Source: Blastocystis sp. Blastoise (taxonomy: Eukaryota; Protista; Bigyra: Opalinata). Taken from it: a stretch of DNA of 64,000 bases. The position numbers and the translations under genes are program-made. Position 1 is the first letter of the stretch, and each line of letters starts with the position of its first letter. A model generated the notes under the pieces. The model did not search any database. It was not told where the DNA came from and saw nothing but the letters and a program-made list of their open reading frames with translations. Location: the NCBI GenBank assembly GCA_039096225.1, contig JBBPEB010000021.1, forward strand, positions 868,001 through 932,000. The letters are read 5' to 3'. Of the stretch, positions 28,806 through 62,182 are shown one piece after another.

Positions 28806-30001
28806 AAGTATCTGTTAACATTTTGATTTCATTGTCCAATCGTATTAATTTATATAATAACCGTGTTTATTAGATGTATTTATAGAATTTAAATTAACAA
28901 AAAATTAAAAGAATAATTCATATTATGACGTTAGGATTTGACAATTTGATCCAATCAATCGATTTTTAAGTTTCTATTAGAAGTTCGTTTATTGTACTAT
29001 ATAATTCTAAGAATTTGCTTTTTGGCAATTTTATCTATTTTTCTTTATTTATATTTATGTCTTATTTTAACTAATATATATATTTATTTTGTTATATACC
29101 TTGTATTTATACTATTAATTCAATAAAATAACAATATAGACAAGGAATATAACATAATTGTCTGTAATTGTTTTAAAAAATAAGCTTGACAGACAAATAA
29201 GCCATAAACAGCTATGAAATAAACCTGATTAAAAAAGATAACATAGAATTACGTTATATAACATACTTTTAATTTACTGACAAATTAATTAATTCAATGA
29301 ATATTTTATATAAGACCTATATATTTATATTATATAAGTTTATAAATATTATAAAGATGTTTTTAGAAAATAGAACTTATTTTTTGATAATTAGCAGATT
29401 TCTTGATTCTTTGTTTTTTCATATATACTATTACAATGTCATAGTTACATTGTTTAAAGACAAATACATAAATATTAATCTCAAATAACTGTTTTAAGAG
29501 TATGAACTGTGAATTGATTAAGAAAAATATTTAATAGATGACGAGATTCAAGTTAAAACGTTTTGTTTAATATATGGTATTAGTTTCTCGATGTTATATC
29601 AAAAGGATAGATAGTTTTATAATGGATCAAGTAAATGTCGAAATGGAAAATGTTGTTTAAAAATCATGAATGTGTATGTATTGTGTTTGGTTGCTTATAT
29701 TGAGCATACTGACCAGAATTCAGTTTAAAATAATAAACTACAGTCGTTAAAGTATTAATGATTGCTGAATATACTCTGTATTTGAGTATATTTTGAAAAT
29801 AAAAAATGAATCTAAGTTTTAAAACTGTATTTAACTCAATTCTAACATATTTTGAATAAGATACACTGTTGAGAATAAAGCAGATTACAACTCATTTCAG
29901 AAACTGTGGGTTTTCAAAATATGAAGAGCTATAAAACGTCTGATATATATATTGATGAGCGTAAATATAGTTTGAAATTAAATCTTTATTAAATAAAATG
30001 T

Positions 30002-30080
<79 letters not shown>

Positions 30081-30085
30081 AATAA

Positions 30086-30151
30086 CTTATGTCAGGATTT
30101 GAACCTGATTGCTACCTAATTATGATAGCCTCTCACCTTATAGAGCATAAG
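30086..30151 (-). ncRNA. Non-canonical tRNA-like RNA, type A copy 1
   Basis: Minus strand CTTATG-CTCT ataaggtg AGAG-GCTATC ataatta GGTAGC-aa-TCAGG ttcaaat CCTGA-CATAAG. Confidence 0.8.
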
Positions 30152-30399
30152 AGTAATAATAATAATAATAATAAAATATGTAATATTTAATATATATATA
30201 TATATATATATATGGTATAAAAAATGTATACTTTTATTTTTCATATAAATTTATCAAATAGAATTTATATTATAGTTGCTTATATATATATATATTTATA
30301 AATAAATAATAGATCATTTTAAAATATATAAAATAGATATATAAATAAGAAGTATATAAATTAATGAAATAATAAGTATAAATAAAGAAATAATAAGGA

Positions 30400-32700
30400 A
30401 GAATCCTTTTACAATAAATAATAAAAAATAAATATAATATTTAAAAGTATATAGATAGAATTAATCAAATAGGAGAGAAGTATATATATATAGATATAAA
30501 AGATAATAAAAGATAAGAATTGAATATAAAAAATAATGAAGACAAGAATAAAAAGAAATAGGTTAACAAATGAGAAGAAGAAGGAGTTAGTTAAAAGGAT
30601 AGAGAGTAAAGAATAAATATAAGGAAGAAGAAGAAAAAGAGAAAGCACATATTGAAAATAAGATAAGAAGGTAAAAAGAAAAGAAAGAAATATGGATAAT
30701 AAAAAAGTATCTATAAGAGAAGAAGAAAAGAAGATAGACACTAGAGTTAGAAGAAGAACTAGGGAGAATAAATTAAGTAGAAAATAAAAATATGAAGAGA
30801 GTACACATAGAAAATATAAGTGAAGACGTAGAAGAAAAGATAGAATATGATGAAAGAAAAAGAGTATAAAAGTTTAAAAAAATATGTATACATATAAATG
30901 AGATTATGTGTAATAAATCTAGAAAATATTGAGATAAAAAGGAAGGAGATGAAAAGGAATAAAATGAGAATAATATAAAAAGAAGAGAAGGAGAAGATTT
31001 AAAATGAAGATGTGGAAGAAGAATGAGAAGAATGATATATAGAAGATATAAAAAGAGAAGAAGCAGAAGATATAGAAAAACGATAAATAAAATAAGAAGA
31101 GAAATATAGAGAGAATGAGATTGAGAAGGAAAGGAAGGAAATAAAGGATATAAAAGAGAAGGGACTAAGAAGAAGGATATTTAGAAGATCTATAAGAAGA
31201 AGAAGAAGAAGGAGAAGTAGAAGGAGAAGAAGAAGGAGAAGGAGAAGAAGAAGAAGAAGAAGAAAGATGAGGGAAATAAGGATATGCAGAAGAAAAAGGG
31301 GAAGGCCATATAGTAGATATAGAAAGAGGAGAAGGATAAATAGAAGGATATAGAGAGAAAAGGATAGAGAAGAAGAAGAAGAAGATAGAGAGAATAATAT
31401 ATAGAAGAAGAAGAATGAAGTGAAGTGAGGAGATTGAGAAGAAAAAGAAACAGAAAAAATAATGATATATAGAAGAAGAAAGAGATGAAAAATAAATAAG
31501 AGAAGAAGGAAAATCAAAAAAAAAGAATGAGAAGAAGATACAGAAGAATAAGGAGAATAAGATATATCGAGGAAGAAGGAGTATGAGGATGTATAGAAGA
31601 AGAAAGATGAATAGAAGATATAGAAGAAAAAGATGGAGACAAACGACAGAAGAAGAAGATACAATAGAATATACTAGAAAAAAATATATAAATAGAAGAT
31701 ATAGAAGAAGAAAGATAATAAGAAAAAAAGGAGATATGCAAAAAGAATGACAAATAGAAGATATAGAAGAAGAATAAGGAGATATAGATGATATAGAAAG
31801 AAAATGATATAGAGAAAATACAGAAAGAAAATATAAATAAACAGAAAAAATGTGAAAGAGAGAATATATAGAAGAAGACATAGAAGAAGGATATATAGAA
31901 TAAGAATATATAAAAGATATATAGAAGAAAAAGGAAATATAGAAAATATAGAAAGTCAATAAGGATATAATGAAGACGAAAGAGAAGGAGAATAATTATA
32001 TATAGAAGAAGAAGAGATACAGAAGGAGATAGTGAGGAATAAAAGAAATATACACGAAGATATAGAAGAAAAATGATAAGAAGAAGAAAAACGAGAAGAG
32101 AAAGAGTAAAGAAACAGAGAATAATTATATATAGAAGAAGAAGGAATGTAGAAAGAGTGTGTAGATAAAGAATTAAAAGAAATAGAGTATAGAAAAAGTA
32201 AAAGTGGAAGGAAATGAGAAAGGAAGTAATAGTAAAAGAATGAAATGAAGAAGAAAAAGAGAAGAAGAAAAGCAGAAGAAGAAACAAAAGAAGAAGAAGA
32301 ATAGGATAAAGTAATGGAAATGAAGAGAGTATGTAATTATAGGAGAAGAAGAACCAGTAATAATTAATGGAGGAAAGATGAAAGAGAAGGAAAAACTAGA
32401 ATATAATATAAAAGAGCATAAAATAAAACATACTATAAAGTAGTATTAGGAATAACTCTAACTGTCTATATAACATAAGAGTATAAGAATATAAAATGAA
32501 TAAAAACTAAAAGAGAATATAGAATTGAAGAGTGAAGGTGAGAAGAATGTCAATACAGGACAAGAGGAGAAAATAAAAATCAAAAAGCAACTATATACAT
32601 AGAAATAACGTTAGTAATATATCTATATAAACAATGATAATAAAAAGAAAATAATACATATAATAAGTCAATAATAAGAGGTGTTGTAGATAAACATAAT
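30400..32700. other. Purine-rich, C-depleted (plus strand) low-complexity tract, cassette copy 1
   Basis: GAA/AGA/ATA-dominated with internal repeats such as GAGAATAATTATATATAGAAGAAGAAG. Confidence 0.8.
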
Positions 32701-34323
32701 AAAAATAATATAAATATGAATAAAACATATGCTTAATAACTAATAAGTTTATATCATATAAGTATATATAAATATAAACATATATATATATATATTACAT
32801 GAAAAAAAAAGATAATGTTATTGTAATAAGACAAGAACTATATATAGAATTATAATAATAACATGTATAGATAATATATAGTATTAAAATAATTATTATG
32901 AAGAAAAATAATATAGAAAATATATATATCTACTGATTTGAAAATATATTTAGCTATGTGACTCAAAAAGACAAATCTAAATAGAGAATAAAGTATATTA
33001 ACTGAAGAAATATACTCTTTTAATGTTTGAGAACCAATCTGTTTAGCTAATTAGCCAATTATTTTTTTTAAATCTTTAAAACTCACTCATCTGACACAGC
33101 TAACAAATTCAGACTCACTGAGAAAGCCTAAAGAAACATTTTTATATGGTGACGTCACATCATCCCATTTATAACCATAAGACAATAGCTGATCATCTAA
33201 CTTAACCATTTTACATCACCTATATAAGCTTATAATAGAGAAAGAGAACATACCACCTTAGATCAATCTGCCAATGGAGACTGGAAGGTACTCTACTATA
33301 CTCCTAGGGCCTATATATAGATAGATATATGCTTAGAACATACAAAAACGAAATTAATCATATTTTATATATGATTATCGAAACTTCACTATAAATTAAC
33401 TTATTAAATTTTATTGAAATCTAAATATTTCTACTTTTTATTATTTATTATTTAATTTAAATACTTTAAACCGTTATTCTTACTCCTGATGTCTTCTTGT
33501 TGTTGATGGAGTATGTAATTATGTAAATAAAAATAGTTAATTGATTAATTATTTATAGAGTGTTACATAAAACAAAATTGATGATTCAAGTCATGAGAAA
33601 ATCACTAGACTTGATGAAGGCAAGAAGAATTAGTCAATTATATGATAGTCACTAGATTGCCTAAATGTGTAGAACTGTCAGAAAAGGTGAGTTTGTGTGT
33701 GTTTAAATTTAAATTCAACATTAGTTTGAATACGTATTTCACTAATTAATTCAATTTTAGAGAAGTTACAAACAGAATTAATTTTTCTCCGTGATATGTT
33801 GAGTTAGAATGCATTTATTCTGACATTCTGCTAATAATTTAAATTTAATTATGACCTATATAAGCCAAAGTTAATTATAATAGTTTTCTAGGTAATGTAG
33901 ATTTGTCAAGGTTCTTTAAAAGTCTCAAGAGTGGTTTATAAATGTTACAAATGACTTTTAGTGTCAATTATATTAATATAAACAGTTGAAATGTTTTTTA
34001 AGAGTATAGACAAAGAATGCATTGCGTGTTTATAGACTTCAAGGTGTTATTGATAAATATTTATTTTTTATTTGTGTGTAGAATTGATTAGAAGAATGAT
34101 TAACAAAATAAATTATTGAATAGAAAATTATAGGTGAATGTAATTATGAATGTGTTTGGTTTTAAGTAAAGGTATTTAAAAACAATATAGAAGAGCGACT
34201 AACGATGTATAGAGTTTATTCAATTACATGAAACTCAATGTATCAATTCATACTGGTTCTAATGAATGAGAATATCTATAGAGAAAAATATTTAAATTTT
34301 AATGAAAAAAATATAATATATGA

Positions 34324-34391
34324 CCCTAGATCAGGAATTGAACCTGATAACAATCTATTAATGATTGCTACTAACCATATTCAGTCTAAGG
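34324..34391 (-). ncRNA. Non-canonical tRNA-like RNA, type B copy 1
   Basis: Minus strand CCTTAGA-CTGA atatgg TTAG-t-AGCAATC attaata GATTGTT-a-TCAGG ttcaatt CCTGA-TCTAGGG. Confidence 0.85.
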
Positions 34392-34454
34392 AGTATTAAT
34401 TATATGAATATAACCATATATATATATATGTTTAACAGACAAAACCCCAAAATA

Positions 34455-34500
<46 letters not shown>

Positions 34501-34777
34501 AAGAGTTGTATCACCATTATTTGTAATAATTTATATAAGCTGATTATAGACTATATATATATATATAATGAATGAATAAGATGACATGAATTAATTAAGG
34601 GAATAACAAGTCTATATATATATGAATATATACATATATGTAATTATGAAAAATATATATATATATAAAGTAAAAAAAAATATATTTAAATATAACATAG
34701 GAACATATTATGTATATGTATTAAAACAATGAAAATACATACTCTTTACGTAGAATCTATTTAATATCTTCACACAC

Positions 34778-34809
<32 letters not shown>

Positions 34810-35499
34810 TAAAGTAGTGAGTATAAATGTATTTAATAGAAATGAAAGTTGGAAAACATAAAGTAAAGGATATATATATATATATATACAAGAAAATAAG
34901 GTTTAACATAATACAAAAGTAAATCATTCAAAACAATTATATATATATCCTTAATCCTATATATAATAAAATTGATATAAATATAATATTATAAACAAAA
35001 AGAGATATAGTAATATATAATAAAGTGTATATATAATTATTATCAAAATAAATACATAACTATATATAAAAGGAGCCAAATTGAATTTATATATATTATT
35101 ATAGTATATATACTACATAATTGAGCAAAAGAAATAAAAGAAAGAACTATTACCTTTTCTATATATATGTATAATTAGCTAAAAAAATATATTATAAAAA
35201 AGTAATATATAATATAGATATAGAAAAATAAAGTGATATAAAGAATTAAATGGAAGAATAATTATATAAAAGATTAAGTATACAAAATGTTTTCTTTTAT
35301 ATCATAAAAGAAAAATGTATTATAAATATAATCAGATGAAAAAACTATATATATAAAACATGAGATACATGAAAAGATGGCTTATACATTTCTATCATAC
35401 TATATATAATATATACTATCTACACCTATAGAATTATATATATAAGTCTTTAATTATATATGCATATATAATAAGTATATATAAAATATATATAATATA

Positions 35500-35647
35500 T
35501 ATATATAATAAGTATATATAAAAAAATATATAATATATTTATATATACCTTAAATAAATAATAGTAATGTAGTAGAAGAACTAAAGACCATCTATATATA
35601 GATTATTCTTCATTATTCTATTTTTTATACTTTGAATTTGATAAATA

Positions 35648-35678
<31 letters not shown>

Positions 35679-36222
35679 GTCTATATATACACTAGACATA
35701 AGACTGATTCTAGTATATGATATCAACTTCCAAAAAAGCACAAATCAATTATCTAAAGAATATATGTTAATTAAGGATATTTTCTTAAAAATATTATATA
35801 TAGTAAATATATATAAAATAATAATATAAAAAGAATATAAAAAAAAGTTGATAATATATATATATACATTTCTTTAACTAAAGCAACATTCGTATATTTA
35901 TAAAACACCTATATAACATATATATATATATAATTATAGTATTACTAATTATATTTTTATATAACTAATAAAACTATAGAGACATAAATAACATAAATAT
36001 AAACAATATGATATTATTAATAATTTTAGGTACATAATATAGAATATATATTAAATATAAAAAATATTATATGGAAAATAAAATAAGATATATAAATAAT
36101 TTGAAAGGGTATACAATAAAAATTAATTATTTATATATAAAAACTATATACGTTAGATATCAAAATTGATGTCTATGAACTTTATAATATAAGGGAAACG
36201 TCTCATTCTCTATATACAAATA

Positions 36223-36257
<35 letters not shown>

Positions 36258-37860
36258 TAAACATAAGAATATCATATATTGATAAGTAATAGAAAATTAT
36301 ATGTAAATTATATATATATATATAATATACCTTGTTACATTGTAGTATTGATGCAGAGAAGTTAATGATTACATAGATTAATAATACTATATATATGTAA
36401 GAATAAGATAAAAAATAAAGATTAAAACAGTCAATATAAAATATTTGTATATCATGTATATATAAAGTTTATATAAATTATTAAAAATTATTAATAATAA
36501 AATATTCAAGTATATAAATGAATATATCTATATAAATATACATATTAATTAGCTGATAAAAAGAAAATATTGAATGAATTTTGAATTATTTAATATCTAT
36601 ATATAAGTATAATATATATAATAAAAGAAAGAGCATATATGTATATTATAATAAATATATTACCTTTTTATATTGACTAAATAATCTAATGTGATAATGA
36701 ATACTTCTATATATAATAATATGTATAAAAGAAAAGTATATGCATATAAGAAAACTAATAGAATAATAAGAATATATATATAAACAATAATGATAATAAA
36801 TACATACTCGAACCACATATAAACGATAGAACCACAATCATAAGGAAATGAATAACTATAATATAAATTTAATTAAATAGATATATATAGTTTTAACAAT
36901 AATAATATAAATATATATATATACAATTCATAACCATTTTTCTCTGTATTTTTGTTTTACATATATAATCATATTAATTTATTCCATAGCTCTATAGAAT
37001 AGAAATAAATATTTTAAACATATATATATATACCTTTAAGGACTCAATAATAGTACTGAAATCGAAAGGTTATAGAACTCCAAAACAATAATTAATCACC
37101 ATTTCTATATAATATATATAATATATTGAAAATAATACAAATATATACTTTCAATACAAATATAAAACCATCTGAATATCACGAACGACCTAGACATTAA
37201 TTTCCTTAGTAGATGTAAACCAATTACTTTTTTCTTTTTAATAATCTCCTAAATAAATAATTAAATATAAAAATAAAAGATAAAATAACATATCACTAGA
37301 ACATACAGCAATGAATATTTTAAAAGAGGAAATGTCCATCATTCTGTCTTCTTCCAATATTGAATAAATAACGTCATCACGCTTTCTAAACCATGTTTCT
37401 AAGCCTATATAAATAATGGTAAATTAAATAAGCATATACCTAAAAGAATGAATCGTCAATTAGTTGATTACCTCGATTCATTGCAATCTTAATATATAAT
37501 AATATACATATAAAAATATAATATAAATATAAAGTATAAAATAACCCTCTAAATAAACAAATAATCCATATAATAATATATATAAAATATACTTTTTTCA
37601 GCAGTTCATTTAAGCCGATGCTGAATAGATTTTTCAAAGATTTAAGTGACTCTGAAAAACTCCAAGAATAGGGATCATATCAAAGAAGACTTTTTATCCC
37701 ATTATTTGAATCTCTAGAAATTATTTTTAAAACTTGCTCATTAAATCCCAAAGAAGTTTTTATCAAAGAGGTTGCTGCCGCTATTTAGGCTGATTTATCG
37801 CTCTCTCCATCCTCAGAATGATTTCTCGTGACATTCAAATATTGATTTTTTTCATATATT
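35500..37860 (-). pseudogene. Cargo gene X copy 1: multi-exon, in-frame stops, unknown family
   Basis: Exon-like blocks bounded by GT/AG, e.g. SA*IAAATSLIKTSLGFNEQVLKIISRDSNNGIKSLL*YDPYSWSFSESLK and GLETWFRKRDDVIYSILEEDRMMDISSFK; boundaries approximate. Confidence 0.45.
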
Positions 37861-38599
37861 ATCATTATAGACATATAAAATGAATCTATGTATGTTTTTT
37901 AGTTATAAATCTATATTTTGTATCATCTGCTGTCATCAAATATTTAATTTTATATAGTAATCAGTTGATCAATTGGTTGCTTATTGTTTACATGCTCAAA
38001 ACAAGCTTTATCTAGTTTCAAATCAACTGAAAAGGTCTTGGTGAACAATAAAGATGAATCTAAGGTATATAATTATTTTACATTTTCTTATCTTGTTTAT
38101 TCTCTGTTATATCTATTTTATTTCTATGCTATTAGTACATCTCTATTATTATCATAGCGTTGTTATGTTGTTCTAACTTAAAAACATATTTTTTACAATT
38201 GAATTACTTTACTTTTCTATTTAGTTGTTTCTCTAATATATATATACTTTAATTTATTTATTTTATTTAATTATTTAGTGAATCTTAACAAATCCAAGCA
38301 TAACCAAAACAAATTGCAATGATTCAAGTCTTTATTAAGGTATATATCTTTTAATAGTATAACTAATTTATTTTAACTGACTATTAATCTATATTTGATA
38401 TTCTTGTCTTTAAAGTTATTGTTATATTATTATTTTATTAATATTATATATTCTTTAGACTTATTGTACTTTTTATTATTTTTCTATAGAGAGTTTGGTC
38501 AGATAGTATTAATTTATGATTGAAGTTATCAGTTGCTATTCTCTTCTTTTATTTAGTTTACTATTCTTTTAAATATTATAGTCATCTTGTTTATAGAAC

Positions 38600-44500: not shown

Positions 44501-45050
44501 TCTTATTTTCTTATCCTTCTCCTTCTTCTTCTCCTTCTTATCTTTCTCTTTCCTATTCTCCTTTTTATTCATATTTTGCTCCTCTCCTTCTATTCTCTTT
44601 TGAGTCTCTTCTTTTTCCACTTTTATTCTCATATTTCTTCTTCTATACCCACATATTATCCCTTCTCCGTCTTCTTTTTCTATATTATCATTATACTTCT
44701 ACTTCTAATCATTCTCATTCTACTTATTCTTACCTTCTATTGATGTTTTTCTTTTTCTTCTTCTTCTTCTTCTTCTTGTCCTTTATCTTGTCCTTCTCCT
44801 TCTCACTCGTCTTATTCTTGTCCTTGTCCTTGTCCTTGTCCTTGTCCTTGTTCTTCTATATCTCCTTGTCCTTCTACTTCTACTTTTTCTCTTTCTCATT
44901 TTACTTCTGCTGCCACTTTTTTATCAACTTCTATTATCATTCTTCATCTACGTATATTACTACCACTTCTTATTATAAATTTCCTATTCCTATTATTCTA
45001 AGAATCGTTTTCTTCATTCAATTGAAGTTGAATTCTCGTTTTTTAAAACT
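38600..45050. other. 6.4-kb pyrimidine-rich, G-depleted (plus strand) low-complexity tract
   Basis: TCT/TAT/ACT triplet mosaic with dispersed repeats (CTTCTAAGTCTAAGTCTATTTATAC at ~40491 and ~42453; ATTCACATTATCCTTT at ~39682 and ~43012). Confidence 0.85.
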
Positions 45051-45255
45051 CTATACACAATATTTGATATATTGAATTATATATATATTGATATATAAAA
45101 CAATAAATAGAATTGTGTATATATGTTACTTTTATTAGTATGAAGAATAACATATATAGAAAAACATATGTATTATATATATATGAATATATATATACTT
45201 AATCGGATATATTAGAATTCTATAATATATTATAAATAAGCATATGTATAGAATG

Positions 45256-45300
<45 letters not shown>

Positions 45301-46610: not shown

Positions 46611-46745
46611 TTGGGTATTTCTACCAATTTTGTAAAAATTTTGGGTATTTTAACAAAACTTTTGAATATTTTTGGGTATTTCTAACAATTCGATTTTTTT
46701 TTGGGTAGGTTAAAATAATTATGGTTTTTTTGGGTATTTCTAACA
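46611..46745 (-). repeat. Inner right end: 5 x TTGGGTATTTCTA(A/C)C-like motif, ~30-bp period
   Basis: Copies at ~46611, 46641, 46672, 46701 (degenerate) and 46730; ends immediately before the transposase ATG. Confidence 0.85.
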
Positions 46746-49700
46746 ATGCCTCTTACTGATAATAATCTCTTCATGGATGTTGAAGTATATAAATGCCCTG
46801 TTCTTAAGAGTCTTCTAAAACATAATAATACATATAATAAGTTTATAATTTATAATATAAACAATCAACGATGGTATTGTATTTCGTGCTTATTGTTTTC
46901 AAAAGATCCCATTATTCTTGGTGAAATCTATTCAACAACTTCTGTTAATGCTCATAAAAACTCAAAGTCACACAAAGAATCCATGAAAATGTTTAAGTCA
47001 CTACTTAATAATCTTCAAAATAATCAGACGCTTCTTATTAATAGTACTCATTCCATTTCAACAAATAACAAAAAAGTCTGGAAGTACTTTTTCATGAAAA
47101 TGTTTAACTGTATGTCTCTTTGTCTATCTAGTATCCATTCAATATATGGAGAGACAACAAGACTTACTTCTCCTCATTGTGGTATCTTTTTGAAATTGCT
47201 ACTTTTGACTGGAAAGAATGATGAGTTATTCAACACTTTTCTAAAAGAGAATCAATACATTTATCAATCTGTGAGATCCACTCAGAAGTGGATAGAATTG
47301 ATATCAAATGATCTTATGCGTTCATTAAGAAATAGAATAGGAAATAGAATATATAGTATAACAACAGATGGTACTACTTGTCATAATATTGAGCAATTGG
47401 TTGTTACTATTAGGTTTTGTAATGATAATTTTGCTGTTAATCAATATTTTCTTAGTATGATGGAAGAAACATCTCCATCTGGAGTTAAAATAGCACAAAA
47501 TATAAAAGCATGCTTAGATATGAAAGAATTAGATATAAAAGATTTATGTTCTGTGTCATATGATAATTGTATTTGCAATACCAGTAATATTTCTGGAATT
47601 GTTTCAGGATTGAAACAACCTCCTGGAACAATTTTGGGATATGGATGTCGTGCTCATCTCCTTAACTTGGCACTTCTTGACCTTCAAAATAGTACTATTG
47701 ATTCTTTTTTATATATAACGTTGATAAATGATGTTGCCGTTTCTTGGGCAAAGTGTTCAAGGCTAAGAGTTATAATTAAAAACCATAATTTCAGTAAATA
47801 TACTCTTCCTCAAGTATCACAAACAAGGTTTATTGCAAGATACTACTCTATTATCCCCTATGTTGCCCATCCAAAACAAACGTTGTGCAAAATATTTTTG
47901 CTATACTTCTATTCCTACAATAAAAAAAATGTTTGTAATAATAATTCTGAAAAAATGCTTCAGTCGTTCGGTGAGTTATCTTTTCACATTTTCCTTGAGT
48001 GTTGGTTTCGAATACTATGCGTTGTTAATCATGCATCATCACAATTGCAATCAGAGACACTAACTGTAAATGAATCCATGAAAATTATCAAAAGATTATA
48101 TAATGATATTTCTAATTTATCTTCGTCTGATAATATAACTGAAATGTATGCAAATGCTATACAACGACGTGAGTATATCTATAGTTTTTTAGATGATTTA
48201 GTCAAATGTTTTGAACGAAACAAATATGATAATACAAGTGATTATTCCATAAATAGTATATTGCAAATCATGAAAAAGATTCCTGATTATTCAAGCAAAT
48301 GGAATAAACTGTCCATGGATGAATGGAAAAATAATATTGATGTTTTGGAAGCAATTGAATGTGAGGAAGATGAATGTATTATGAAGTCCAATGATAATGA
48401 TGATGAAATAATTGAATTATATGGTAAAAATTCAGAACTTCATTCAACATTCTCTTTTACTGAGTCAATTAGATCTATTCTTAATCATAGAGATGAGGCT
48501 GAGAAGAAAAACTTTGATGAAATGTGCTTACAAAAAGGATTGAACGTGAATTCACGAAAAAGGTATGTTGAAATATGCAATATTATTTTGTTTCTCTTAA
48601 AATATTGGGAATTCATTAATATATATATATAGAACTAGACAGAATGTCTTAATCAATAGAGACAATGACTCTAATATGGCTCCAGTTATTGAAAATAGGA
48701 ACCATTTCTCTCATCCAGGTAGAAATGACAAAATCGTGTCAAATATAAATTTATTTACAGCAGAACAATATATTGATTATGTAATGAACGCTGAAATTGA
48801 AAAGAGAAATGATGGTGCTCTGTCTAGCAAAAATTGTGAAAAAAGTTTGAATATTTTACCCAAAGGTTTTCAAATTCAGGATGATGATATTTGCATTTTA
48901 TATGATTCTCTATTTCCTTCTTCAAATTCAGAAACAACAAATGCTTCTGGTTGTGCTAATAGTCAGGTTACTGAAATTCAACCAAAAAATAATTCTTGTG
49001 GTGATACTTTATTATCAATTTCTCCATTCAAAAGGTGTCGTGGAAGGCCAAGAAAGAACAGGAATGATATACAGTGTGATTCAGATTGTTTCAAAGAAAC
49101 GAATACAATAATTTCTGGTTGTAAAAGAAGTACTACTTCTTATAGTGACTTTGGCAGTAGTAACTATTCAAACAAACACGAAAAACGTTTACAAAATGAA
49201 CAAAATAAGAATATTTCAAACGATGAGAAGAAAAAAATGATCATTACTACTATTTCTTCTCAGCAATATAATATTATGTTTAAGAATGAAAAGAATAATG
49301 TATATCGTTTTTCAGCTAATTTCAATTTGATGATTCTTCAACTCAAGCAGAATTTAGCAAGTCGTCTCTTTAAGAATATCATACAAGATTTATCTATTTG
49401 CTATTTCATTTCCACAGAATTTATTCTACAAACAGAAAGTAGTTTTCAAAATGTTTTTGTTGATACTTTTTATGGTTTATTTTCTTCTCGTTTTTCTGAT
49501 AATTATTGTATAGAAATGGAAAAGATTATGTCATACTTGAAAGAAACCGCGATTCTAACGTCTTCAATTGCTTCATTAGTAGATTTAGTAAGAAATCACT
49601 TCCCAAAGTCTTACATTCTTTACAAACAAACAGTTGAGCTGTGCCTTACAATAAACCCAACCAGCATAAAGAGTGAGTCGTCGTTTAGTATTCTTAAAAG

Positions 49701-49899
49701 GGTAAAATCTTATAGTCAAAACGGAATGAAAGGAAATCTCCTTGAAGCTTATATGTCTTGCACTTGTAATGAGTGCCTTCTGTCGTCTCTTAATGCCTCT
49801 AAAATTGTTGATGATTATATGGATGGACTACACCTACAACCTTTGAGTAATACATTAATTCAAAGAGTACTTAAAACTGAACTTCTTAAAACATTATAA
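46746..49899 (+). CDS. hAT-family DDE transposase (ZnF-TTF-like, DUF4371-like core, hAT dimerisation domain); one intron 48563-48632
   Basis: WYCISCLLF zinc-finger; YSITTDGTT (D), VSYDN (D), GCRAHLLNL (CxxH), SQTRF, PTSIKSESSFSILKRVK (E); the GTATGT...ATATAG intron joins the two ORFs in frame (~1027 aa). Confidence 0.9.
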
Positions 49900-50811
49900 A
49901 TGTGAACTACTATTAGTATGGTGCATGCTGTTCATTGTAATTTATTATATATATTATATATATTTAAGTTTGATTATTCCGTATTTTTCCTTTTATAAGA
50001 GTTATATTTATTTTTTGTAATCATTATCAAGTTCTTCTATTTATTTTGTTAGGTTTTGAGTTTTTAATTCTTAAGTTTTTATCAGAATCAGTATGTGTAC
50101 AACAAATAGCATTAAATATGGCTTTTATTTTATATCTAACATTTTTTGCTATATGAAAACGCTTTAAATAAATAATTCATATAAACATATCAACAAAACA
50201 GCAAGTTAAGATTATCGGGTTCTTTCATTTTTTATACTCTTTAACATAACAGATAAACTTGTATAACAATATGTGCTTTCAAATACTTTTAAAAAGTTTC
50301 AAAATAAAAACATCATCTGTATAGAAAAAAAGATCTAAATATTACGAGATTCAAAGTCACTTCAATGAATCCGTGTAAAACAGACCATGACTCATGATAT
50401 ATGAAGAGAAGGCTAGAAATTATTGTGGATCAAGTGAATGTGGTTGGTAGTATAGTGTATTAAATTATGACCGAGATTTATAAACTGTAAAGAATAATAT
50501 TTCAAATGTAAACCATAACCCATGGCTCTGTATATGGTGTGCAAATGGTGAAGCCAAAATGTTCATTCACTTAGCTGAGAATATAATCCATTTTGATAGA
50601 AATAATTGAGATCACGTATCATAAAGAAGTTTGAAGCAATATAAATAAACCTTAAATTACTATTATGTATGAAGTACAATGAATACCTATTGATTTCAGA
50701 AACTGAATAGTACAATAACACTAGAAAACTCTATAAAACATTATCTATATATGCATAACAATGAGTGTAGTTTAAATTAAGAAATCTATATATATAATAT
50801 ATATAGAATAG

Positions 50812-50875
50812 CTTATGTCAGGAGTCGAACCTGATGGCCTTTTTGAGTATAGCCTCTCACCATATAGAGCATAAG
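50812..50875 (-). ncRNA. Non-canonical tRNA-like RNA, type A copy 2
   Basis: Minus strand CTTATG-CTCT atatggtg AGAG-GCTAT actcaaa AAGGC-ca-TCAGG ttcgact CCTGA-CATAAG. Confidence 0.8.
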
Positions 50876-50999
50876 TGATAACCAAGAAAATAATCATATG
50901 CGATATGTAAATATTAAATTGACATAAAAAACATGACATCTTATATATGAAGAACCTAAATATATATTTTATTAAAAAATATATATATAACATATAGAC

Positions 51000-52429
51000 A
51001 GCATTTAAGTAAATAATAGTAGAAAGTATTAGAAAAAAAGAGAGAAAAAGAGACCACAAAAAGAAAAATATCATCTAAGAGTAATAGAAAATCTAATAAG
51101 AGTAGAAGTAATAAAACAATGAAGAGTAAATATAGTAATGAAGGTGAGATCTGTATGAGAATTGTTGTACAATTAAGATAAAGTATCGCTACTATTACAT
51201 TTGAATTATATTGAAATTAAGATTAAGAAGTGAAGAAAAAAAATTAATTGGAGAATACGATTAATAATAAAATGAAGGTAAATAAAAAAAGAATTAATAT
51301 TTTGAATTAAAAAAAATATATATAAGATAAAAGTACAAAGAATATATATAATTTGAATAAGAGTATGACAGGATTATTGAGTGAGTTAGAAAATGACTTT
51401 AATTAGAGAATAAATTAGTAGAAAAATAGGTGGAGGAGTCATTGAAGAAAAAGGTAGGAAAAAATACGAAAAGAATGTAGAATAATGTAGAATAAGAAAC
51501 AATTCCAATACAGAATAAAAATGCAATTAGAAATAATACTAAAAATAGAAGTAATAATGTGAACTGAATCAAGAATGTGTAACGATAGAAGTAATAGTAC
51601 AAGTGGATGATGATTGAAAGAAAGAAATGAGAGTTAGAATATGAATAAGAATAAAGGAAGGAATGAGATAAAAAGATATATATATATATATAAGAAGAAT
51701 AAAAGGTAGAATGGAGACATAAATTAGAAATAGAATTAGGAAAGATTAGTTGGAAATATAACAGGGAAGAAATGAAACTATTGTTAAAGGTAAAAGAATA
51801 AGAAGTAAATATAGTATTATGAGTAGAATTAATAATCAAAGAAGGAGTCAAGATATAAATAGTATATCAATTAATACTGAAGAAATAGAGAAACATGTAT
51901 ATGAGTAAGTATATGAATAGAATAGATTATAGAATTAAAAAAAGTGAAAATAATGGTATGAGCATGGCAAAAGAATGATCAGCAGCTGTAAAATAAACAA
52001 GAATATGATTACAAGTAGTAGATAAAACTTTATCAAAAAGAGAATAAGAAGAAATGAAAGAAATGATAAAAATAATTAAAAAATAAAAGCAGCCATAAAT
52101 GTAGTAGTAATAGCTAGAGCAAGAAATAATCTAAGACAAATACGTGTAACAACAAATATAATACTAAAAAGAGAGAAAGAATAGAAGTATAAAAAATAAT
52201 TATAGTATTAAGAGATTTTGGAAAAAATAAGAGAATATTCATTACAGTAGTTAATATATTGTAAATATGATATAAAAATAAATAAAGCATTAAAATCTAG
52301 ATTCATTTTAGAAGTAATACTAAACGTAGAAGTACAAAAAAGAGCCAGAATAAAATTAAATAATTAGGAATAATTTCTTGAATGAATGTAATAATTAATA
52401 TTAATAAGTCTGAATAAAAATATGAGAAT

Positions 52430-52487
<58 letters not shown>

Positions 52488-53300
52488 TAAGATTATTTAA
52501 ATGATAAAAAGTAGATAGAATTAAATACCAGAAATGTAGCAAATAAGGAATCAAGAATAAATATGTTTAAAAGAATAAAATGGAATTATAATTAAGAGTG
52601 TTAGAATATAAAAATAGAAAAGGAATAATTATATAATTAAGTTATACATAGTAAAAATAGAGAAGAAAGATAATTAGTTAGGAAATATAGGAAAAAGAAG
52701 ACATAGATATATACACATTGCATAAGAAACAAGTATATGATTGAAAATGAATATAAGAATGGTTGCAGGAATAGTAATAAACAAATCATTAGAATTAGTA
52801 AAGAAATGGCTTCAAGATAAGTACGGAGAGAAAGTAGAGATATATATAAAATAGTTAGTATGATATTGTATTAGAATTAGGATTAAAAATAGGATTGAAA
52901 AAGAAAAAGAAAATAAAGATGTATAAAAATTTATAATAGAAGTTTAGAAGCAATACTTGAGATTAGAGTAGGAATGTAAAAAAGGAAGCTAACTACAGAT
53001 GGATATAAATACAGAAATAACTTGACTAAATGTTTTATACATAACAGAATATATATATGAATTAGGATTTGGCGTATTAATGAATGTGACAATAAATAGA
53101 GAAGTTTCTTTTAGAAAAAGTAGAGTAAATAAAGTATAGAATAGATTAAAGACATAAAGCCAATACGTCTATATATATGATGATATATAAAAACGGCATA
53201 TAAATATTAAATGAGAAATCATATTTATCAATAAGAGATAGAAAGTAAAAATAAAATGAAAATAATATAATAATAAAATAAAAAGGAATTAATACACATT
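51000..53300. other. Purine-rich, C-depleted (plus strand) tract, cassette copy 2
   Basis: Same position relative to tRNA-like A as 30400-32700; NNA triplet periodicity with many TAA/TAG/TGA. Confidence 0.7.
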
Positions 53301-54868
53301 ATATACTAATTATAAACACTAAACACACTATGATTTAAAAAACATATATCAAAAAATATATATACAATAAAGAATTATTCAGTTATTATTTGAGATATGT
53401 TGGACTTTTATTAATAATGCATTACTATAAATAAAATATTATAGAGATAAAAATATTATATATAAATATAAATAAAACATACATCTACTGTTTAGAATCA
53501 ATTATATTATTCACTTTAAAGAACACTTTTTTGAGTTTCGTAATCAGTTTATTCTTTGATGATAAGAGATGAATTAATTGTTCTTTTTGAATTATAGAGG
53601 AAGAAAATTATGTACCTAGACTTTTCTATTGCCCTATCGCATGTTGCTAATTAATACTAATCATCAACAGTTCATAGCAGTCGAATAATAATACGTACCA
53701 CACTATATATCATAATGCCATATAATCTTGTATAATAAGAAATTCATACATGACATATATTCAAGAATAGTATGACTCACCAGATAACAAACTCTTGAAA
53801 AAACCTTTCTTTTCGTTTCATCATCACTTAATGTTGATGTTGCTTTTTCAAATAGATAATTTCAAACTATATAGATGTAAACATATACGTTCAATATTAA
53901 AATACAAAAAAAAACCAACAATATATATCGTTTATAATAATTAATCCATAAAAATTCTTTTGAACTTTGATAGATTTCTTTTTATCAGATAACATTCATA
54001 TTATTATATTGAATTAATTATGAAAGTAATTCTTGATTCTTTTGCTGTTTATGAGTGGTAGCATTACTATTTCTGCAAAATTAAATAAGTTTATTCATTC
54101 ATTTTTCCATAATGTGTAAGAAATAGAATCTTATGTCGTTTATAGATATTAGGGATTTGGGTTAAGTAAAAATTTACCATTATTACTGTATTTTATGAAA
54201 ACTTCTTAACCATACTAGTTGCCATAATTCATATAAATTCAATATTCTCTTGATAATGAACTTATGATCAGTATTTGAAAAGCATATTAAAGAAAAGGTC
54301 TATTATATTTGAATCAAAAAGAGTGTTTAGAATTATTTGTTAGTCCATATAAAAAATGATACAAAATTTTATGTGTAACTACTAGATTGTGCTTAAAATC
54401 TATATTACGTGTCGGAAATTTAAAATAAATGATGTGAAACAGTGATGTAAGTTCATGATGATCTATCAAAAGCTTAGTAAAGTAAATAAAAAAGCCCTAT
54501 ATCATTAAATGGTTCTGATTAATTTAAATGACCTCAACGAATTTAAAATGAAAAATATTTTGACTGCATTACCTGTTTGAAAACTTTAAAGAGTTGATAA
54601 ACAATGCCACTATTCGTTTTGAGTATAAAATTGATTAGAATGATTAACTAAAAAATGAAATAATGAATTATATATTCCAAGTGATTGCAATTGGAAATGT
54701 GTATTTTGATAATAAAGAGTAAACAGAAGGTTTGTAGAGAAAAAACAGTATTAGTCATTTTGTTTCAAAATATTTTAGATCCTATATATTTATTTAATAA
54801 AATAATTCATAAAGAAAACGTAATCAAAATAGAATATTATGAAAAATAATAAAAAATATCGTAAATAA

Positions 54869-54935
54869 CCTTAAATCAGGAATTGAACCTGATAACAGCA
54901 TAATATCGCTATTACTTACCATACTAAGTTTAAGG
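54869..54935 (-). ncRNA. Non-canonical tRNA-like RNA, type B copy 2
   Basis: Minus strand CCTTAAA-CTTA gtatgg TAAG-t-AATAGC gatattat GCTGTT-a-TCAGG ttcaatt CCTGA-TTTAAGG. Confidence 0.85.
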
Positions 54936-55635
54936 AATATTAAATACATGAATAGTATCAATTATTAATAATATAATATATAAAAATAGCAACTAATAAG
55001 AATAAAAAAAATGTACTTTACGATAGTATAAACCAATACTATTGCAAAAAAGCATATTAATAAAGAATAAAATACAACATACATAGCAATATAATTATAT
55101 ATAATAATACATGTATATGAAAGAAAAATAAAATTGAATACATATATATTTTATAACAGAATGCAGAATAGAATAATATAATATAGATATAAAAAATAGA
55201 AATAAGTAAGACATATTAAAACTAATTCACGAAAAAAGTTAATGACGATGATTAATAAATACAATAACTTATATACAATATAAATGAAATGTACAACTCT
55301 TAAGATAAATATATGTGAATAATAAATAACATGAATAATACGTATATATATGTTTAAGAATTATTATATTTAAAGCTATATATAACCTATATAATAGAGT
55401 AAAATAGAGATATTGATATTAAAGATATATATAAAGGATATGTAGCGAAAGGAGTATTATATGTATATTAAACAAAATTTGTACTAATGATACAAATAAG
55501 TCCCTAAGAATATACGCTAATAACACCAGCCAAAAATAATTCATATATATAAGGATATCAAGAAATATAATGTATTATTATGAATACTAAAATGGAAACA
55601 ATACATAGAATTATTCAAAATATTGAGAACTATGC

Positions 55636-55699
<64 letters not shown>

Positions 55700-56009
55700 C
55701 TATATATATATATATATATATATTAATGAATGTATCTTAATAGACATGTATATATATGATTCTATATATATATGAAATAATATATAAGAGAAAATATATA
55801 TTAAGGAAATGGAAATATATACAATACAATTGAATTAGAAAAAATATTAATCAACAGAATATATATATATATATATATATACAGTATTCTTGATATTGAG
55901 ATAATATTTGAATAGAATATTGAATTATGTATCATCTAAATATAATGATAATGAAAGATTCTATATAAAAATATTAAAAAAAATATGTATATATATAAAT
56001 GTGTACATA

Positions 56010-56699
56010 ATTATCAGAAACCATTACGCCGCGAATACGTCTTTTCTACTACAATCTCTTTGAGCATGATTCTATAATGAAATAATAATATAAAGATATC
56101 TATATATATATATTTCTACAATATATAAATTGCATTCTCAAATATATATAATAATACCACATAAAAATATAAAAATAAATATATACTTCCCACTTCAGAA
56201 AAAGTAATAAGACAAAAAGTAATATAGGACCAAATTCTTAAACATTCACCATTACTTTTTACAAAATCTACCTATATAATATATAAATATTAAAATAGTA
56301 TAAGATATACAATATGCACATAACATAGGCCAACAAACATACTTGACAAGGAAATGTTGATCATCATGGTAAAATCCAAATATTGATTATCCATCTATCC
56401 ATGATCTTCAAATGACCGTTCTAAGACTATATAGATAAATTAAGCTAATAATAAAATACTTTAAGACTGGATCGCCAATTACATTCAGGCCTTTCATTTT
56501 ATTTTACTTCATATCAACTATAGAATATATTTCATAGCAATATATACATACGAATAATGGATCAACTCTATTTAAATACTAATATTTACTATTTAAAAGT
56601 ATTATGAATATTTGCTATCCCCATAAAACTTTTGAATCTAAAAACTCTTCTCTATATAAGGTCATGAAACAATTACATATTTTCAGCCAAATTAAGCAT
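56010..56699 (-). pseudogene. Cargo gene X copy 2: multi-exon, in-frame stops
   Basis: Short GT-AG introns; exon patches similar to 37290-37490 (AATTGGCGATCCAGTCTT vs AATTGACGATTCATTCTT; ATGATGATCAACATTTCCT vs ATGATGGACATTTCCT). Confidence 0.45.
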
Positions 56700-57091
56700 G
56701 ACTGAAAAAAGTGTCACATTTTTTGCCGTGGCAATTGTCACAAAAGTCAGGGAAGGGGCTGATGAAAAAGAAAATTAAAATTATTGTCTACTTTAAAATA
56801 TGAAAATGATGTCAACATAAATCATATTTTTTTATTGTTTATATATGCAAGCTCATCATCTTTATTTTTATAAGTAAGATATAAATTCATAAATCAAGAC
56901 TCTATGTAAAATTAACATTTCTTAACTATTTTGTTTCATATTTGCAAAATTTTCGCTTTTATTTATTCATAGCTTTTCAATTCATTTTATATATACTATC
57001 TATATTATTAAAAACTTTAAATATCCTTAATATATAACATAATTGTAATTAAGAAATGACTCATTTATTGGAGTTGAAAAATATTCTACAA

Positions 57092-62116: not shown

Positions 62117-62157
<41 letters not shown>

Positions 62158-62182
62158 GTATTATTAGTATTATTATTATGTA

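What the first reader, a model, noticed from the sequence alone, without database searches (positions are those of the whole stretch)
29400..56700. Same multi-part cassette present twice in diverged form, once in the inner element and once in the outer element
Seen: the order [gene-like Z(+)] - [tRNA-like A(-)] - [~2.3-kb purine tract] - [~1.3-kb complex region] - [tRNA-like B(-)] - [gene X(-)] occurs at ~29400-37860 and again at ~50200-56700. Anchors are the A/A' and B/B' RNAs, ACGAGATTCAA (29541 and 50344), GGATCAAGT(A/G)AATGT (29624 and 50427) and the gene X exon patches. A-to-B spacing is nearly the same (~4.2 and ~4.1 kb). Inference: conserved order and spacing despite heavy sequence divergence points to a functional module moved by two different mobile elements. 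I recognise no known system with this layout.
Basis: partly seen in the sequence, partly recalled or inferred. Interest (0 to 1): 0.92.

Follow-up and report, generated by a model that had tools for sequence, protein, structure and literature searches.

The report
Nested hAT transposons sharing tRNA-like module
In a tortoise-gut Blastocystis genome, one hAT-type jumping gene sits inside another, and each carries an old, diverged copy of the same internal module, whose best-kept parts are two compact tRNA-shaped RNA genes; this is unusual cargo for such a transposon, and its function is unproven.

Summary
The window comes from a 21-23 % GC tortoise Blastocystis. I mapped two nested DNA transposons.

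- **Outer element:** 25550-56761, with a perfect 13-bp terminal inverted repeat (TIR) and an 8-bp target-site duplication (TSD). It encodes a hAT-like transposase.
- **Inner element:** 28722-46752, with its own TIR and subterminal repeats and its own 8-bp TSD. It lies inside that transposase gene.
- **Cassettes:** cassette 1 lies in the inner element. Cassette 2 fills the outer element from the transposase stop to the right TIR.

Between the cassettes, only islands still align:

| Island | z against shuffles |
|---|---|
| tRNA-like A/A' | 20.5 |
| tRNA-like B/B' | 18.7 |
| 140-bp island next to B | 14 |
| X | about 6 |
| Z | about 6 |

Spacers between islands are at random level. The four tRNA-likes share one compact cloverleaf: 96 % of cells are paired and 9 of 21 pairs carry compensatory changes. 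All four fail the Rfam tRNA model, and their anticodon loops differ. X and Z carry in-frame stops in both copies.

My best reading is that the module was inherited within a hAT lineage and that its tRNA-like units are under constraint. They are probably Pol III-type small RNA genes, TFIIIC-bound sites, or both. That function is inferred, not shown. No genome-wide census was possible.

The parts
25550..56761 (+). OUTER element: hAT-type DNA transposon, 31,212 bp (about 13.2 kb without the nested element)
   Evidence: The perfect 13-bp TIR CAGCCCCTTCCCT occurs only at 25550-25562 (+) and 56749-56761 (-). The 8-bp direct duplication ATGAAAAA lies at 25542-25549 and 56762-56769. GTGACA-type motifs are shared by both subterminal regions.
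27355..49896 (+). hAT-like transposase gene of the outer element. It is broken once, by the nested insertion; I saw no in-frame stops in the pieces that match the paralogs. The public gene model P0001 covers only the 3' part.
   Evidence: tblastn: the N-terminal parts of paralogs P0002, P0003 and P0004 match 27355-28721, and their following parts match 46752-48563. P0001 is 100 % identical to 46746-48563 plus 48631-49896. Pfam gives weak hits to DUF4371 (E 1.4e-3) and the hAT dimerisation domain (E 2.1e-3). Distant relatives P0005-P0007 carry PF14291, PF27073 and PF05699.
28722..46752 (+). INNER element: 18,031-bp transposase-less DNA transposon nested in the transposase gene
   Evidence: The 8-bp duplication TTACTGAT lies at 28714-28721 and 46753-46760. 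The ends share TGTTAGAAATACCCA in inverted orientation (28730-28744 / 46731-46745). An 80-bp imperfect inverted repeat joins 28727-28805 and 46690-46611 (72.5 %, E 1.6e-7). The motif GTTAGAAATACCCA occurs five times in the window, all at the two ends. No transposase remnant lies inside.
29485..37870 (.). Cassette 1 (in the inner element): Z1 - A - purine tract - complex region - island Y1 - B - A/T-rich tract - X1
29485..29700 (.). Z1: conserved island 380-600 nt downstream of A on the minus strand. It is homologous to Z2. If it is coding, the shared reading frame has 1 in-frame stop.
   Evidence: z 5.9. Short collinear motifs shared with Y1.
30080..30154 (-). tRNA-like A
   Evidence: ARAGORN calls it 'tRNA-Ile(aat)'. 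The Rfam tRNA model scores 18.8 bits, below the gathering score of 29. It folds to a cloverleaf at -18.8 kcal/mol, z -2.6. My covariance model (CM) R1 scores 90.4 bits.
30311..32623 (+). Purine tract 1: 80 % purine, degenerate GAA-type and 26-44-nt repeats
34015..34155 (.). Y1: conserved 140-bp island 165-305 nt downstream of B on the minus strand
   Evidence: 68 % identity to 54562-54702, z 14.1. No conserved RNA fold. No codon-position bias in the differences: 17/13/17.
34319..34393 (-). tRNA-like B
   Evidence: Cloverleaf fold at -20.0 kcal/mol, z -2.8. CM R1 scores 89.4 bits. No Rfam tRNA hit even in a 131-nt search. ARAGORN finds it only at the 80 % threshold. A run of 7 T follows 11 nt downstream on the minus strand.
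37108..37870 (-). X1: multi-exon ORF remnant facing leftwards. Its conserved frames hold 2 in-frame stops.
   Evidence: z 6.6. No Pfam match for the exon pieces. No protein in the database.
38493..45097 (-). Tract 3: 6.6 kb, 80 % pyrimidine on the + strand (purine on the minus strand), internally repetitive; inner element only
45695..46122 (-). Captured gene fragment in the inner element: two stop-free pieces in different frames
   Evidence: The 80-aa piece matches a repeat found 8-16 times in P0008, P0009 and P0010 (E 1.8e-46 to 5.5e-9). P0010 is a Sushi/SCR-repeat protein.
50290..56690 (.). Cassette 2 (in the outer element, between the transposase stop and the right subterminal region): Z2 - A' - purine-rich tract - complex region - Y2 - B' - A/T-rich tract - X2
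50290..50465 (.). Z2. If it is coding, the shared frame has 2 in-frame stops.
50806..50878 (-). tRNA-like A'
   Evidence: CM R1 scores 82 bits. Cloverleaf with a weakened anticodon arm, z -1.25. Not called by ARAGORN at any threshold tried.
50950..53300 (+). Purine-rich tract 2 (core 51203-52239, 72 % purine)
54562..54702 (.). Y2: conserved island
   Evidence: It overlaps a sub-threshold snoR27 hit (28.3 bits against a gathering score of 41).
54864..54937 (-). tRNA-like B'
   Evidence: CM R1 scores 87.5 bits. Fold z -3.2. ARAGORN finds it at the 90 % threshold with no assignable anticodon. A run of 6 T follows 14 nt downstream on the minus strand.
56190..56690 (-). X2: homologue of X1, abutting the right subterminal region and facing inwards. 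Its conserved frames hold 3 in-frame stops.
57092..57175 (+). Neighbour: genuine tRNA-Leu(UAA), 330 bp outside the right end of the outer element
   Evidence: ARAGORN. Rfam scores 53.8 bits.

Best explanation
**What is shown.** The locus holds two nested hAT-superfamily DNA transposons in a tortoise-gut Blastocystis genome.
- The outer element is of the autonomous type. It reads: TIR, transposase gene (+), a 6.5-kb internal module, TIR.
- The inner element has no transposase. It carries a deeply diverged copy of the same module, and it has inserted into the outer element's transposase gene.

The module contains two units that look paralogous. Each unit has:
- a compact tRNA-shaped cloverleaf gene on the strand opposite the transposase;
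- a short conserved sequence island 170-600 nt downstream of it;
- a kilobase-scale purine-rich or A-rich low-complexity tract upstream of it.

The module also holds an inward-facing ORF remnant, X.

**What is inferred.**
1. The module is an inherited part of this transposon lineage, not DNA duplicated at this locus. Both insertions look young (perfect duplications and perfect terminal repeats), yet the two modules are diverged to saturation outside the islands.
2. The tRNA-like units are the functional core. They keep the acceptor stem, the T-arm, the D-loop GG and the T-loop. They let the anticodon loop drift. The B-type copies are followed by a T-run.
3. So they most likely act as Pol III-type units. 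They would give about 70-nt tRNA-like RNAs that the tRNA-processing enzymes can recognise, or act as TFIIIC-bound DNA sites that insulate the element, or both. They do not act as decoding tRNAs.
4. The low-complexity tracts are fast-evolving spacers kept by position only.
For: **Element boundaries.**, as listed under parts.

**Young insertions against old modules.** Both TSDs match 8/8 and the outer TIR matches 13/13. The 150-nt spacer between two strong islands scores z -1.5, and the 1.3-kb complex region scores only z 3.9.

**Constraint on the tRNA-likes.**
- 78-79 % identity, with z 18.7-20.5.
- A common cloverleaf with 96.4 % of cells paired, against 33-42 % when partners are slid.
- 9 of 21 pairs changed on both sides, and 0 of 500 shuffles reach the observed covariation.
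- B against B' alone has double changes in the acceptor, D and anticodon stems.
- The T-arm is invariant in all four.
- G-U pairs occur only when the minus strand is read as the RNA.
- The 5' leaders of B and B' are conserved, and T-runs follow both.

**Not decoding tRNAs.** The anticodon loops differ between A and A' and between B and B'. The Rfam tRNA score is 18.8 bits for A, and B gets no hit.

**Family size in the window.** My model R1 finds exactly these four in 64 kb; the next best hit scores 13.9 bits.

**Paralogous units.** A and B share the same odd architecture. Z and Y share short collinear motifs.

**No ends of a third element** were found at the cassette borders.
Against: - There is no expression data, so no RNA has been shown.
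- A and A' have no run of four or more T close downstream.
- Only four sequences support the fold, and the structure was derived from them.
- The terminal repeats of the inner and outer elements are unrelated in sequence, so common descent of the two backbones rests on the shared 8-bp duplication and the shared module alone.
- X and Z carry 1-3 in-frame stops in both copies, although the outer element looks young. So part of the 'module' may be dead.
- hAT membership of the transposase rests on weak Pfam scores and distant relatives. The structure model was too poor to use (pLDDT 38.7).
Confidence: 0.5

Rival explanations
1. Independent capture. The cassette is a host chromosomal segment holding two tRNA-like genes, gene X and gene Z. 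Two unrelated transposons picked it up separately by transduplication, and it has no role for either.
For: The terminal repeats of the two elements are unrelated. The inner element demonstrably carries another captured gene fragment. X and Z look like decaying genes.
Against: Two independent captures would have to take the same roughly 7-kb interval, in the same order and with the same internal spacing. Neutral spacers are saturated while the insertions are young, so each copy has travelled with its element for a long time. No host copy lies in the window.
Confidence: 0.17
2. Processing signals. The tRNA-likes are not independent genes. They are RNase P / RNase Z cleavage signals inside a long minus-strand transcript that starts at X near the right end, in the way the MALAT1 and NEAT1 3' ends are made.
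For: All four keep the acceptor stem plus T-arm, which is the part those enzymes read, while the anticodon arm drifts. They share the strand and orientation of X. The purine tracts read as pyrimidine-rich RNA on that strand. PMC12941219 describes this mode of maturation for MALAT1 and NEAT1.
Against: B and B' are followed by T-runs and have conserved short leaders, as stand-alone Pol III genes do. B lies 1.3-2.7 kb from X, across A/T-rich low-complexity DNA. No long transcript has been shown.
Confidence: 0.15
3. A third mobile element. The cassette is itself a non-autonomous transposon that inserted separately into the inner and the outer elements.
For: It would explain why the same block occurs in two elements with different ends.
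Against: I found no inverted repeats or duplications at the cassette borders, and nothing is shared between the borders of the two copies. Cassette 2 runs right up to the subterminal region of the outer element.
Confidence: 0.08
4. Neutral relics. A and B are dead tRNA pseudogenes, and X, Y and Z are dead exons. The islands merely remain alignable because the surrounding low-complexity DNA turns over faster.
For: Sub-threshold tRNA scores. Degraded anticodon arm in A'. In-frame stops in X and Z. The genome is 12 % low-complexity (PMC10690189).
Against: Pairs changed on both sides are found between B and B' and across the family. The 150-nt spacer between Y and B is not low-complexity, yet it is at random level. 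The G+C-rich T-arm is invariant in a 22 % GC genome.
Confidence: 0.1

Closest known systems
hAT-superfamily DNA transposons (the Ac/Ds, hobo and Hermes kind), including nested insertions and transposase-less derivatives
   Same: Both elements make 8-bp target duplications. Both duplications have T at position 2 and A at position 7, which I recall as the hAT target preference; that is from memory, not tested here. Both have short terminal inverted repeats and repeated subterminal motifs. The transposase shows DUF4371 and hAT-dimerisation signals. One element is nested in another.
   Different: Size: 13 kb and 18 kb against the usual 3-5 kb. A 6.5-kb conserved internal module lies downstream of the transposase, with two tRNA-shaped genes on the opposite strand and kilobase-scale homopurine tracts. 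I know of no hAT family described with this, and a full-text search found none.
tRNA genes, tRNA-derived SINE heads, and tDNA / extra-TFIIIC sites acting as chromatin boundaries
   Same: Cloverleaf fold. D-loop GG, and a T-arm and T-loop of the canonical kind, which coincide with the internal Pol III promoter boxes (from memory). T-run after the B-type copies.
   Different: They fail the Rfam tRNA model. There is no linker between the acceptor and D stems. The anticodon stem is 6-7 bp, and only 1-2 nt separate the anticodon and T stems. The anticodon is not conserved. They do not behave as dispersed retroposed copies: there are only four in 64 kb, all at fixed positions within the module, with no flanking duplications.
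tRNA-like 3'-end processing elements of the long non-coding RNAs MALAT1 and NEAT1 (mascRNA type)
   Same: A tRNA-shaped element whose acceptor and T-arm half is kept while the anticodon half is free to vary. It is embedded in a long, otherwise poorly conserved region (PMC12941219).
   Different: Those elements are vertebrate, lie in host genes, and are preceded by a triple-helix element. None of that has been shown here. Here there are two per module, and they lie inside transposons.
Gene-fragment capture by DNA transposons (the Pack-MULE / transduplication kind)
   Same: The inner element carries a fragment of a Cys-rich repeat-protein gene. X and Z look like decaying gene pieces.
   Different: Captured fragments are normally specific to one element and are not conserved between diverged families. 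Here the same ordered block is kept in two elements.

Membership tests
hAT superfamily (outer element) | 8-bp target-site duplication flanking short terminal inverted repeats | tested here: met
   ATGAAAAA on both sides. Perfect 13-bp TIR found only at the two ends.
hAT superfamily (outer element) | Transposase with a C-terminal hAT dimerisation domain (PF05699) | tested here: inconclusive
   18.3 bits against a cut-off of 21.4, E 2.1e-3, on the 3' ORF. No family at E <= 0.01 when the whole of P0001 is scanned. Distant relatives P0006 and P0007 carry PF05699.
hAT superfamily (outer element) | RNase-H-like catalytic fold with an inserted helical domain | tested here: inconclusive
   The AlphaFold2 model has a mean pLDDT of 38.7, too poor for a fold search. 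A profile search against PDB sequences found nothing relevant.
hAT superfamily (inner element) | 8-bp target-site duplication, terminal inverted repeats, subterminal repeats | tested here: met
   TTACTGAT on both sides. A 15-nt perfect inverted match near both tips within an 80-bp imperfect inverted repeat. The motif occurs five times, all at the ends. The outermost few bases are imperfectly matched.
hAT superfamily (inner element) | Own transposase or a recognisable remnant | tested here: not met
   tblastn with seven hAT-like proteins finds nothing inside 28722-46752. It would therefore be a non-autonomous member.
tRNA (Rfam RF00005) | Covariance-model score at or above the gathering score of 29 bits | tested here: not met
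   A scores 18.8 bits in a 136-nt search. B gives no tRNA hit. None of the four appears at E <= 10 in the 28.5-kb search.
tRNA (Rfam RF00005) | Conserved anticodon loop and canonical junctions (two-base linker after the acceptor stem, variable loop) | tested here: not met
   The anticodon loops differ within A/A' and within B/B'. The D stem abuts the acceptor stem. Only 1-2 nt separate the anticodon and T stems.
tRNA-derived SINE | Many dispersed copies, each with its own target duplication and a simple-repeat or A-rich tail | tested here: not met
   Within 64 kb there are only four copies, all at fixed positions in the two modules. The genome-wide count could not be tested.
C/D-box snoRNA (island Y) | Rfam score at gathering level, with C and D boxes | tested here: not met
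   snoR27 scores 28.3 bits against a gathering score of 41, E 2, in one copy only. No conserved fold.
Structured RNA family (A/B elements as a family of their own) | A common fold supported by compensatory changes beyond controls | tested here: met
   96.4 % of cells paired, against 33-42 % when slid. 9 of 21 pairs changed on both sides. 0 of 500 shuffles reach the observed values. Caveat: only four sequences, and the fold was derived from them.

The most novel reading that the evidence does not exclude
A lineage of hAT transposons has, over deep divergence, kept a pair of compact tRNA-shaped RNA genes of a kind that no library recognises: no acceptor-D linker, a long anticodon stem and a free anticodon loop. 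These genes would be a working part of the element, for example as transposon-borne Pol III genes or TFIIIC sites that shield the element, or as RNase P/Z punctuation of its antisense transcript. That would be a new class of transposon-encoded non-coding RNA in a DNA transposon.
Probability: 0.3. Interest if true: 0.75.

Novelty: new variant of a known kind. Interest (0 to 1): 0.55.

Why it matters
DNA transposons are thought to need only their ends and a transposase, and anything else is usually lost fast. Here, two structured tRNA-like elements stay at fixed positions in two diverged elements, although everything around them is randomised. That suggests a cis- or trans-acting RNA or DNA function serving the transposon, or tolerated by the host.

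It also offers a concrete entry into Pol III-related biology and transposon control in Blastocystis, a very common gut eukaryote whose mobile elements are almost undescribed.

On the practical side, the public gene model for this transposase is truncated by the nested insertion. The large 'low-complexity' fraction of these genomes may also be partly transposon-borne.

Tried and rejected
**Alternative genetic code** (stops read as sense). Rejected: host and transposase ORFs of 430-1259 codons are bounded the same way under the standard code.

**Simple local segmental duplication.** Rejected: each copy lies inside its own TIR/TSD-delimited element.

**Ends of the hAT close around the transposase ORF.** None found. 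The true ends are much further out.

**A third cassette next to the 6.6-kb tract.** No T-arm or R1 hit there.

**tRNA-like look of 26468-26548 and 26845-26918 near the left end.** These show no fold signal (z +0.6 and +0.7) and no Rfam hit.

**snoRNA reading of island Y.** Sub-threshold, one copy only, wrong strand relative to B.

**Coding reading of island Y.** An 11-residue core looks coding, but over 49 codons the differences fall 17/13/17 by codon position and both copies have stops.

**Paralogy between the complex region and X.** None.

**Relation between the gene fragment at 45.7-46.1 kb and X.** None.

**Pfam on ten exon-sized pieces of X, Z and neighbours.** Nothing.

**Database search with an X1 exon piece.** Nothing.

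**Exact-pattern scans.** The B-type 23-mer found 0 hits in the prokaryote-genome, viral and metagenome collections; the A-type 27-mer found 0 in the prokaryote-genome and viral collections.

**hAT profile against metagenome contigs.** 0 hits.

**Structure prediction of the transposase.** Unusable, so no fold search was run.

**Over-long outputs.** Whole-window repeat finder, tblastx and short-peptide BLAST were swamped by low-complexity matches and gave little.

Full report
**Source of the window.** The window is about 22 % G+C and full of (TA)n, (AAT)n and GAA-type repeats. A 628-codon ORF at 46746-48629 is 100 % identical to an NCBI protein of 'Blastocystis sp. Blastoise' (P0001, 1027 aa, on a 1.06-Mb contig). 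Three paralogues occur on other contigs of the same genome. The paper describing these assemblies reports that the tortoise isolates have 21-23 % GC, about 12 % low-complexity DNA, longer introns and a standard set of stop codons (PMC10690189). ORF statistics agree with the standard code.

Strict self-BLASTN leaves three collinear matches between the cassettes:
- A/A': 78.6 % over 140 nt.
- A 140-bp island next to B: 68 %.
- B/B': 78 % over 105 nt.

Sensitive settings add two short Z matches and one X match on the expected diagonals. The T-arm 18-mer occurs four times in the window, at exactly these four places, against 0.12 expected.

Alignment scores against shuffles show conserved islands in otherwise randomised DNA:

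| Segment | z |
|---|---|
| A | 20.5 |
| B | 18.7 |
| Island Y | 14.1 |
| X | 6.6 |
| Z | 5.9 |
| Complex region | 3.9 |
| Z-to-A spacer | 2.5 |
| Y-to-B spacer | -1.5 |
| DNA left of Z | 0.7 |

The purine tracts share position and composition only.

**The two mobile elements.** tblastn with the paralogous proteins showed that their N-terminal parts match 27355-28721, while the residues that follow match from 46752 onwards. So the transposase gene is interrupted by about 18 kb.

*Inner element.* The interrupting DNA, 28722-46752, is bounded by the direct 8-bp repeat TTACTGAT. Near both tips it carries TGTTAGAAATACCCA in inverted orientation, inside an 80-bp imperfect inverted repeat. That motif occurs five times in the window, all at these ends. 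No transposase remnant lies inside it.

*Outer element.* It runs from 25550 to 56761. The 13-mer CAGCCCCTTCCCT occurs perfectly only there, in inverted orientation. It is flanked by the direct repeat ATGAAAAA on both sides.

*Shared features.* Both duplications are 8 bp, with T second and A seventh. I recall this as the hAT preference; that is memory, not a tool result.

*The transposase.* It has weak DUF4371 and hAT-dimerisation signals, and its distant relatives carry those domains. A whole-protein Pfam scan, a PDB profile search and an AlphaFold2 model gave nothing usable.

*Breaks.* The transposase gene is broken once, by the nested insertion. The pieces that match the paralogues are stop-free.

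*Placement of the cassettes.* Cassette 1 starts about 0.7 kb inside the left end of the inner element. Cassette 2 fills the outer element from the transposase stop to the right subterminal region.

**The tRNA-like elements.**
- *Detection by tRNA finders.* ARAGORN calls A at default settings, B' at 90 %, B at 80 % (where 28 calls appear in the window), and never A'.
- *Rfam.* The tRNA model scores A at 18.8 bits (gathering score 29) and gives nothing for B.
- *Common fold.* All four nevertheless fold alone into the same compact cloverleaf. It has an acceptor stem of 6-7 bp, a D arm directly abutting it, an anticodon stem of 6-7 bp, 1-2 nt before a 5-bp T stem, and a 7-nt T loop.
- *Covariation.* On the four-way alignment, 96.4 % of cells pair (33-42 % when partners are slid). 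Nine of 21 pairs have changes on both sides, and no shuffle reaches these values.
- *Changes since the copies split.* B against B' alone shows double changes in three stems. The T arm is invariant. The anticodon loops are not conserved.
- *Strand.* G-U pairs fit only the minus strand as the RNA.
- *Flanks.* B and B' have conserved leaders of about 17 nt and are followed by runs of 7 and 6 T. A and A' have no such run.
- *Copy number.* A covariance model built from the four finds only these four in the window, and not the genuine tRNA-Leu.
- *Other collections.* Exact patterns from the B and A types have no match in the prokaryote and viral collections; the B pattern, the only one run there, has none in the metagenome collection.

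**The other islands.**
- *Island Y.* It is conserved at sequence level and has no common fold. Its differences show no codon-position bias. A snoRNA hit is sub-threshold.
- *Z and Y.* They share short collinear motifs, and A and B share their odd architecture. The module therefore looks built from two paralogous units. This is suggestive only.
- *X.* It has four exon-like stretches on the minus strand with about 30-35 % amino-acid similarity between the copies. The conserved frames hold 2 in-frame stops in X1 and 3 in X2.
- *Z.* The shared frame holds 1 in-frame stop in Z1 and 2 in Z2.
- *Searches.* I searched the exon pieces one by one, by reference, with no result.

**The tracts.** All three kilobase-scale homopurine or homopyrimidine tracts of the window lie inside the elements. 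Tract 3 is specific to the inner element and is internally repeated. Its 802-codon stop-free frame translates to Phe/Leu/Ser low complexity, and I do not take it for a gene.

**Interpretation.**
- *Shown:* two nested hAT-type elements, each with a diverged copy of one ordered block; strong conservation with compensatory change in four tRNA-shaped elements; randomised spacers.
- *Inferred:* the insertions look young (perfect duplications and perfect terminal repeats) while the blocks are saturated. So the blocks diverged while travelling in separate element lineages, not at this locus.

The tRNA-like units are the constrained core. They keep what Pol III factors and the tRNA-end-processing enzymes read, and they let the anticodon drift. 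I therefore favour Pol III-type small RNA genes, TFIIIC-bound sites, or both, over decoding tRNAs. I give the structural account about 0.9 and the functional account about 0.3-0.4.

**Rivals.** Four alternatives are set out with their tests in the Rival explanations section: independent capture of a host locus, RNase P/Z punctuation of a long antisense transcript, a third nested element, and neutral relics.

**Comparison with known systems.** The elements themselves are ordinary in kind: hAT elements, one nested in the other. I know of no described hAT with this internal module, and full-text searches found none. The nearest functional analogies are two. One is tDNA-type boundary sites. The other is the tRNA-like 3'-end elements of MALAT1 and NEAT1 (PMC12941219). 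I rate the finding a new variant of a known kind.

**Limits.**

- In notebook entry 3 I wrote the few residues on either side of the nested insertion next to each other, separated by a bar. I built, saved and searched no joined sequence, and the comparison rests on the pieces taken apart.
- In my working I recalled textbook consensus motifs from memory (Pol III promoter boxes, hAT ends and target preference).

Noticed in passing
window 45695-46122 (-): The inner element carries two stop-free pieces (80 aa and 57 aa, in different frames). The 80-aa piece matches a roughly 45-aa repeat present 8-16 times in giant proteins P0008, P0009 and P0010 (E 1.8e-46 to 5.5e-9). P0010 is a Sushi/SCR-repeat protein. 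P0008 and P0009 are labelled 'UNVERIFIED_CONTAM' in a Gekko kuhli assembly, so they probably come from a reptile-gut protist. This looks like a host-gene fragment captured by the transposon.
   Followed up: partly
window 57092-57175 (+): A genuine tRNA-Leu(UAA) (Rfam 53.8 bits) lies 330 bp outside the right end of the outer element. Whether this hAT family prefers to land near tRNA genes cannot be judged from one case.
   Followed up: no
window 46746-46752: The public gene model P0001 starts at an ATG in the last bases of the nested element. The annotated protein is therefore N-terminally cut compared with paralogues P0002-P0004, and the 5' exons at 27355-28721 are left out of the model.
   Followed up: yes
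window 38493-45097: A 6.6-kb tract is 80 % pyrimidine on the + strand. It shows internal self-similarity at the 2-kb scale (about 65 % identity) and holds an 802-codon stop-free frame that translates to Phe/Leu/Ser low complexity. All the large strand-asymmetric tracts of the window lie inside the transposons.
   Followed up: partly
window 26468-26548 and 26845-26918 (+): Two stretches in the left part of the outer element look, by eye, like fragments of tRNA D and T arms. They have no fold signal and no Rfam hit. They may be decayed tRNA-like remnants or chance.
   Followed up: yes
window 1050-1700 (-), 17913-21689 (-), 13352-14086 (+): The host genes flanking the elements include a DIX-domain ORF (E 2.8e-12), a 1258-codon ORF with a hormone-receptor (HRM) domain (E 3.9e-6), and a DNA-ligase exon (E 1.6e-7). 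DIX and HRM domains are unexpected in a stramenopile and may deserve a look.
   Followed up: no
window 60225-62507 (-): A 761-codon ORF has very long Asn, Ser and Pro runs and no Pfam family. It is typical of the low-complexity coding style of this genome.
   Followed up: no
window 33080-33330: The complex region of cassette 1 holds a relatively G+C-rich stretch with a perfect 8-bp palindrome (TGACGTCA). It has no counterpart in cassette 2.
   Followed up: no
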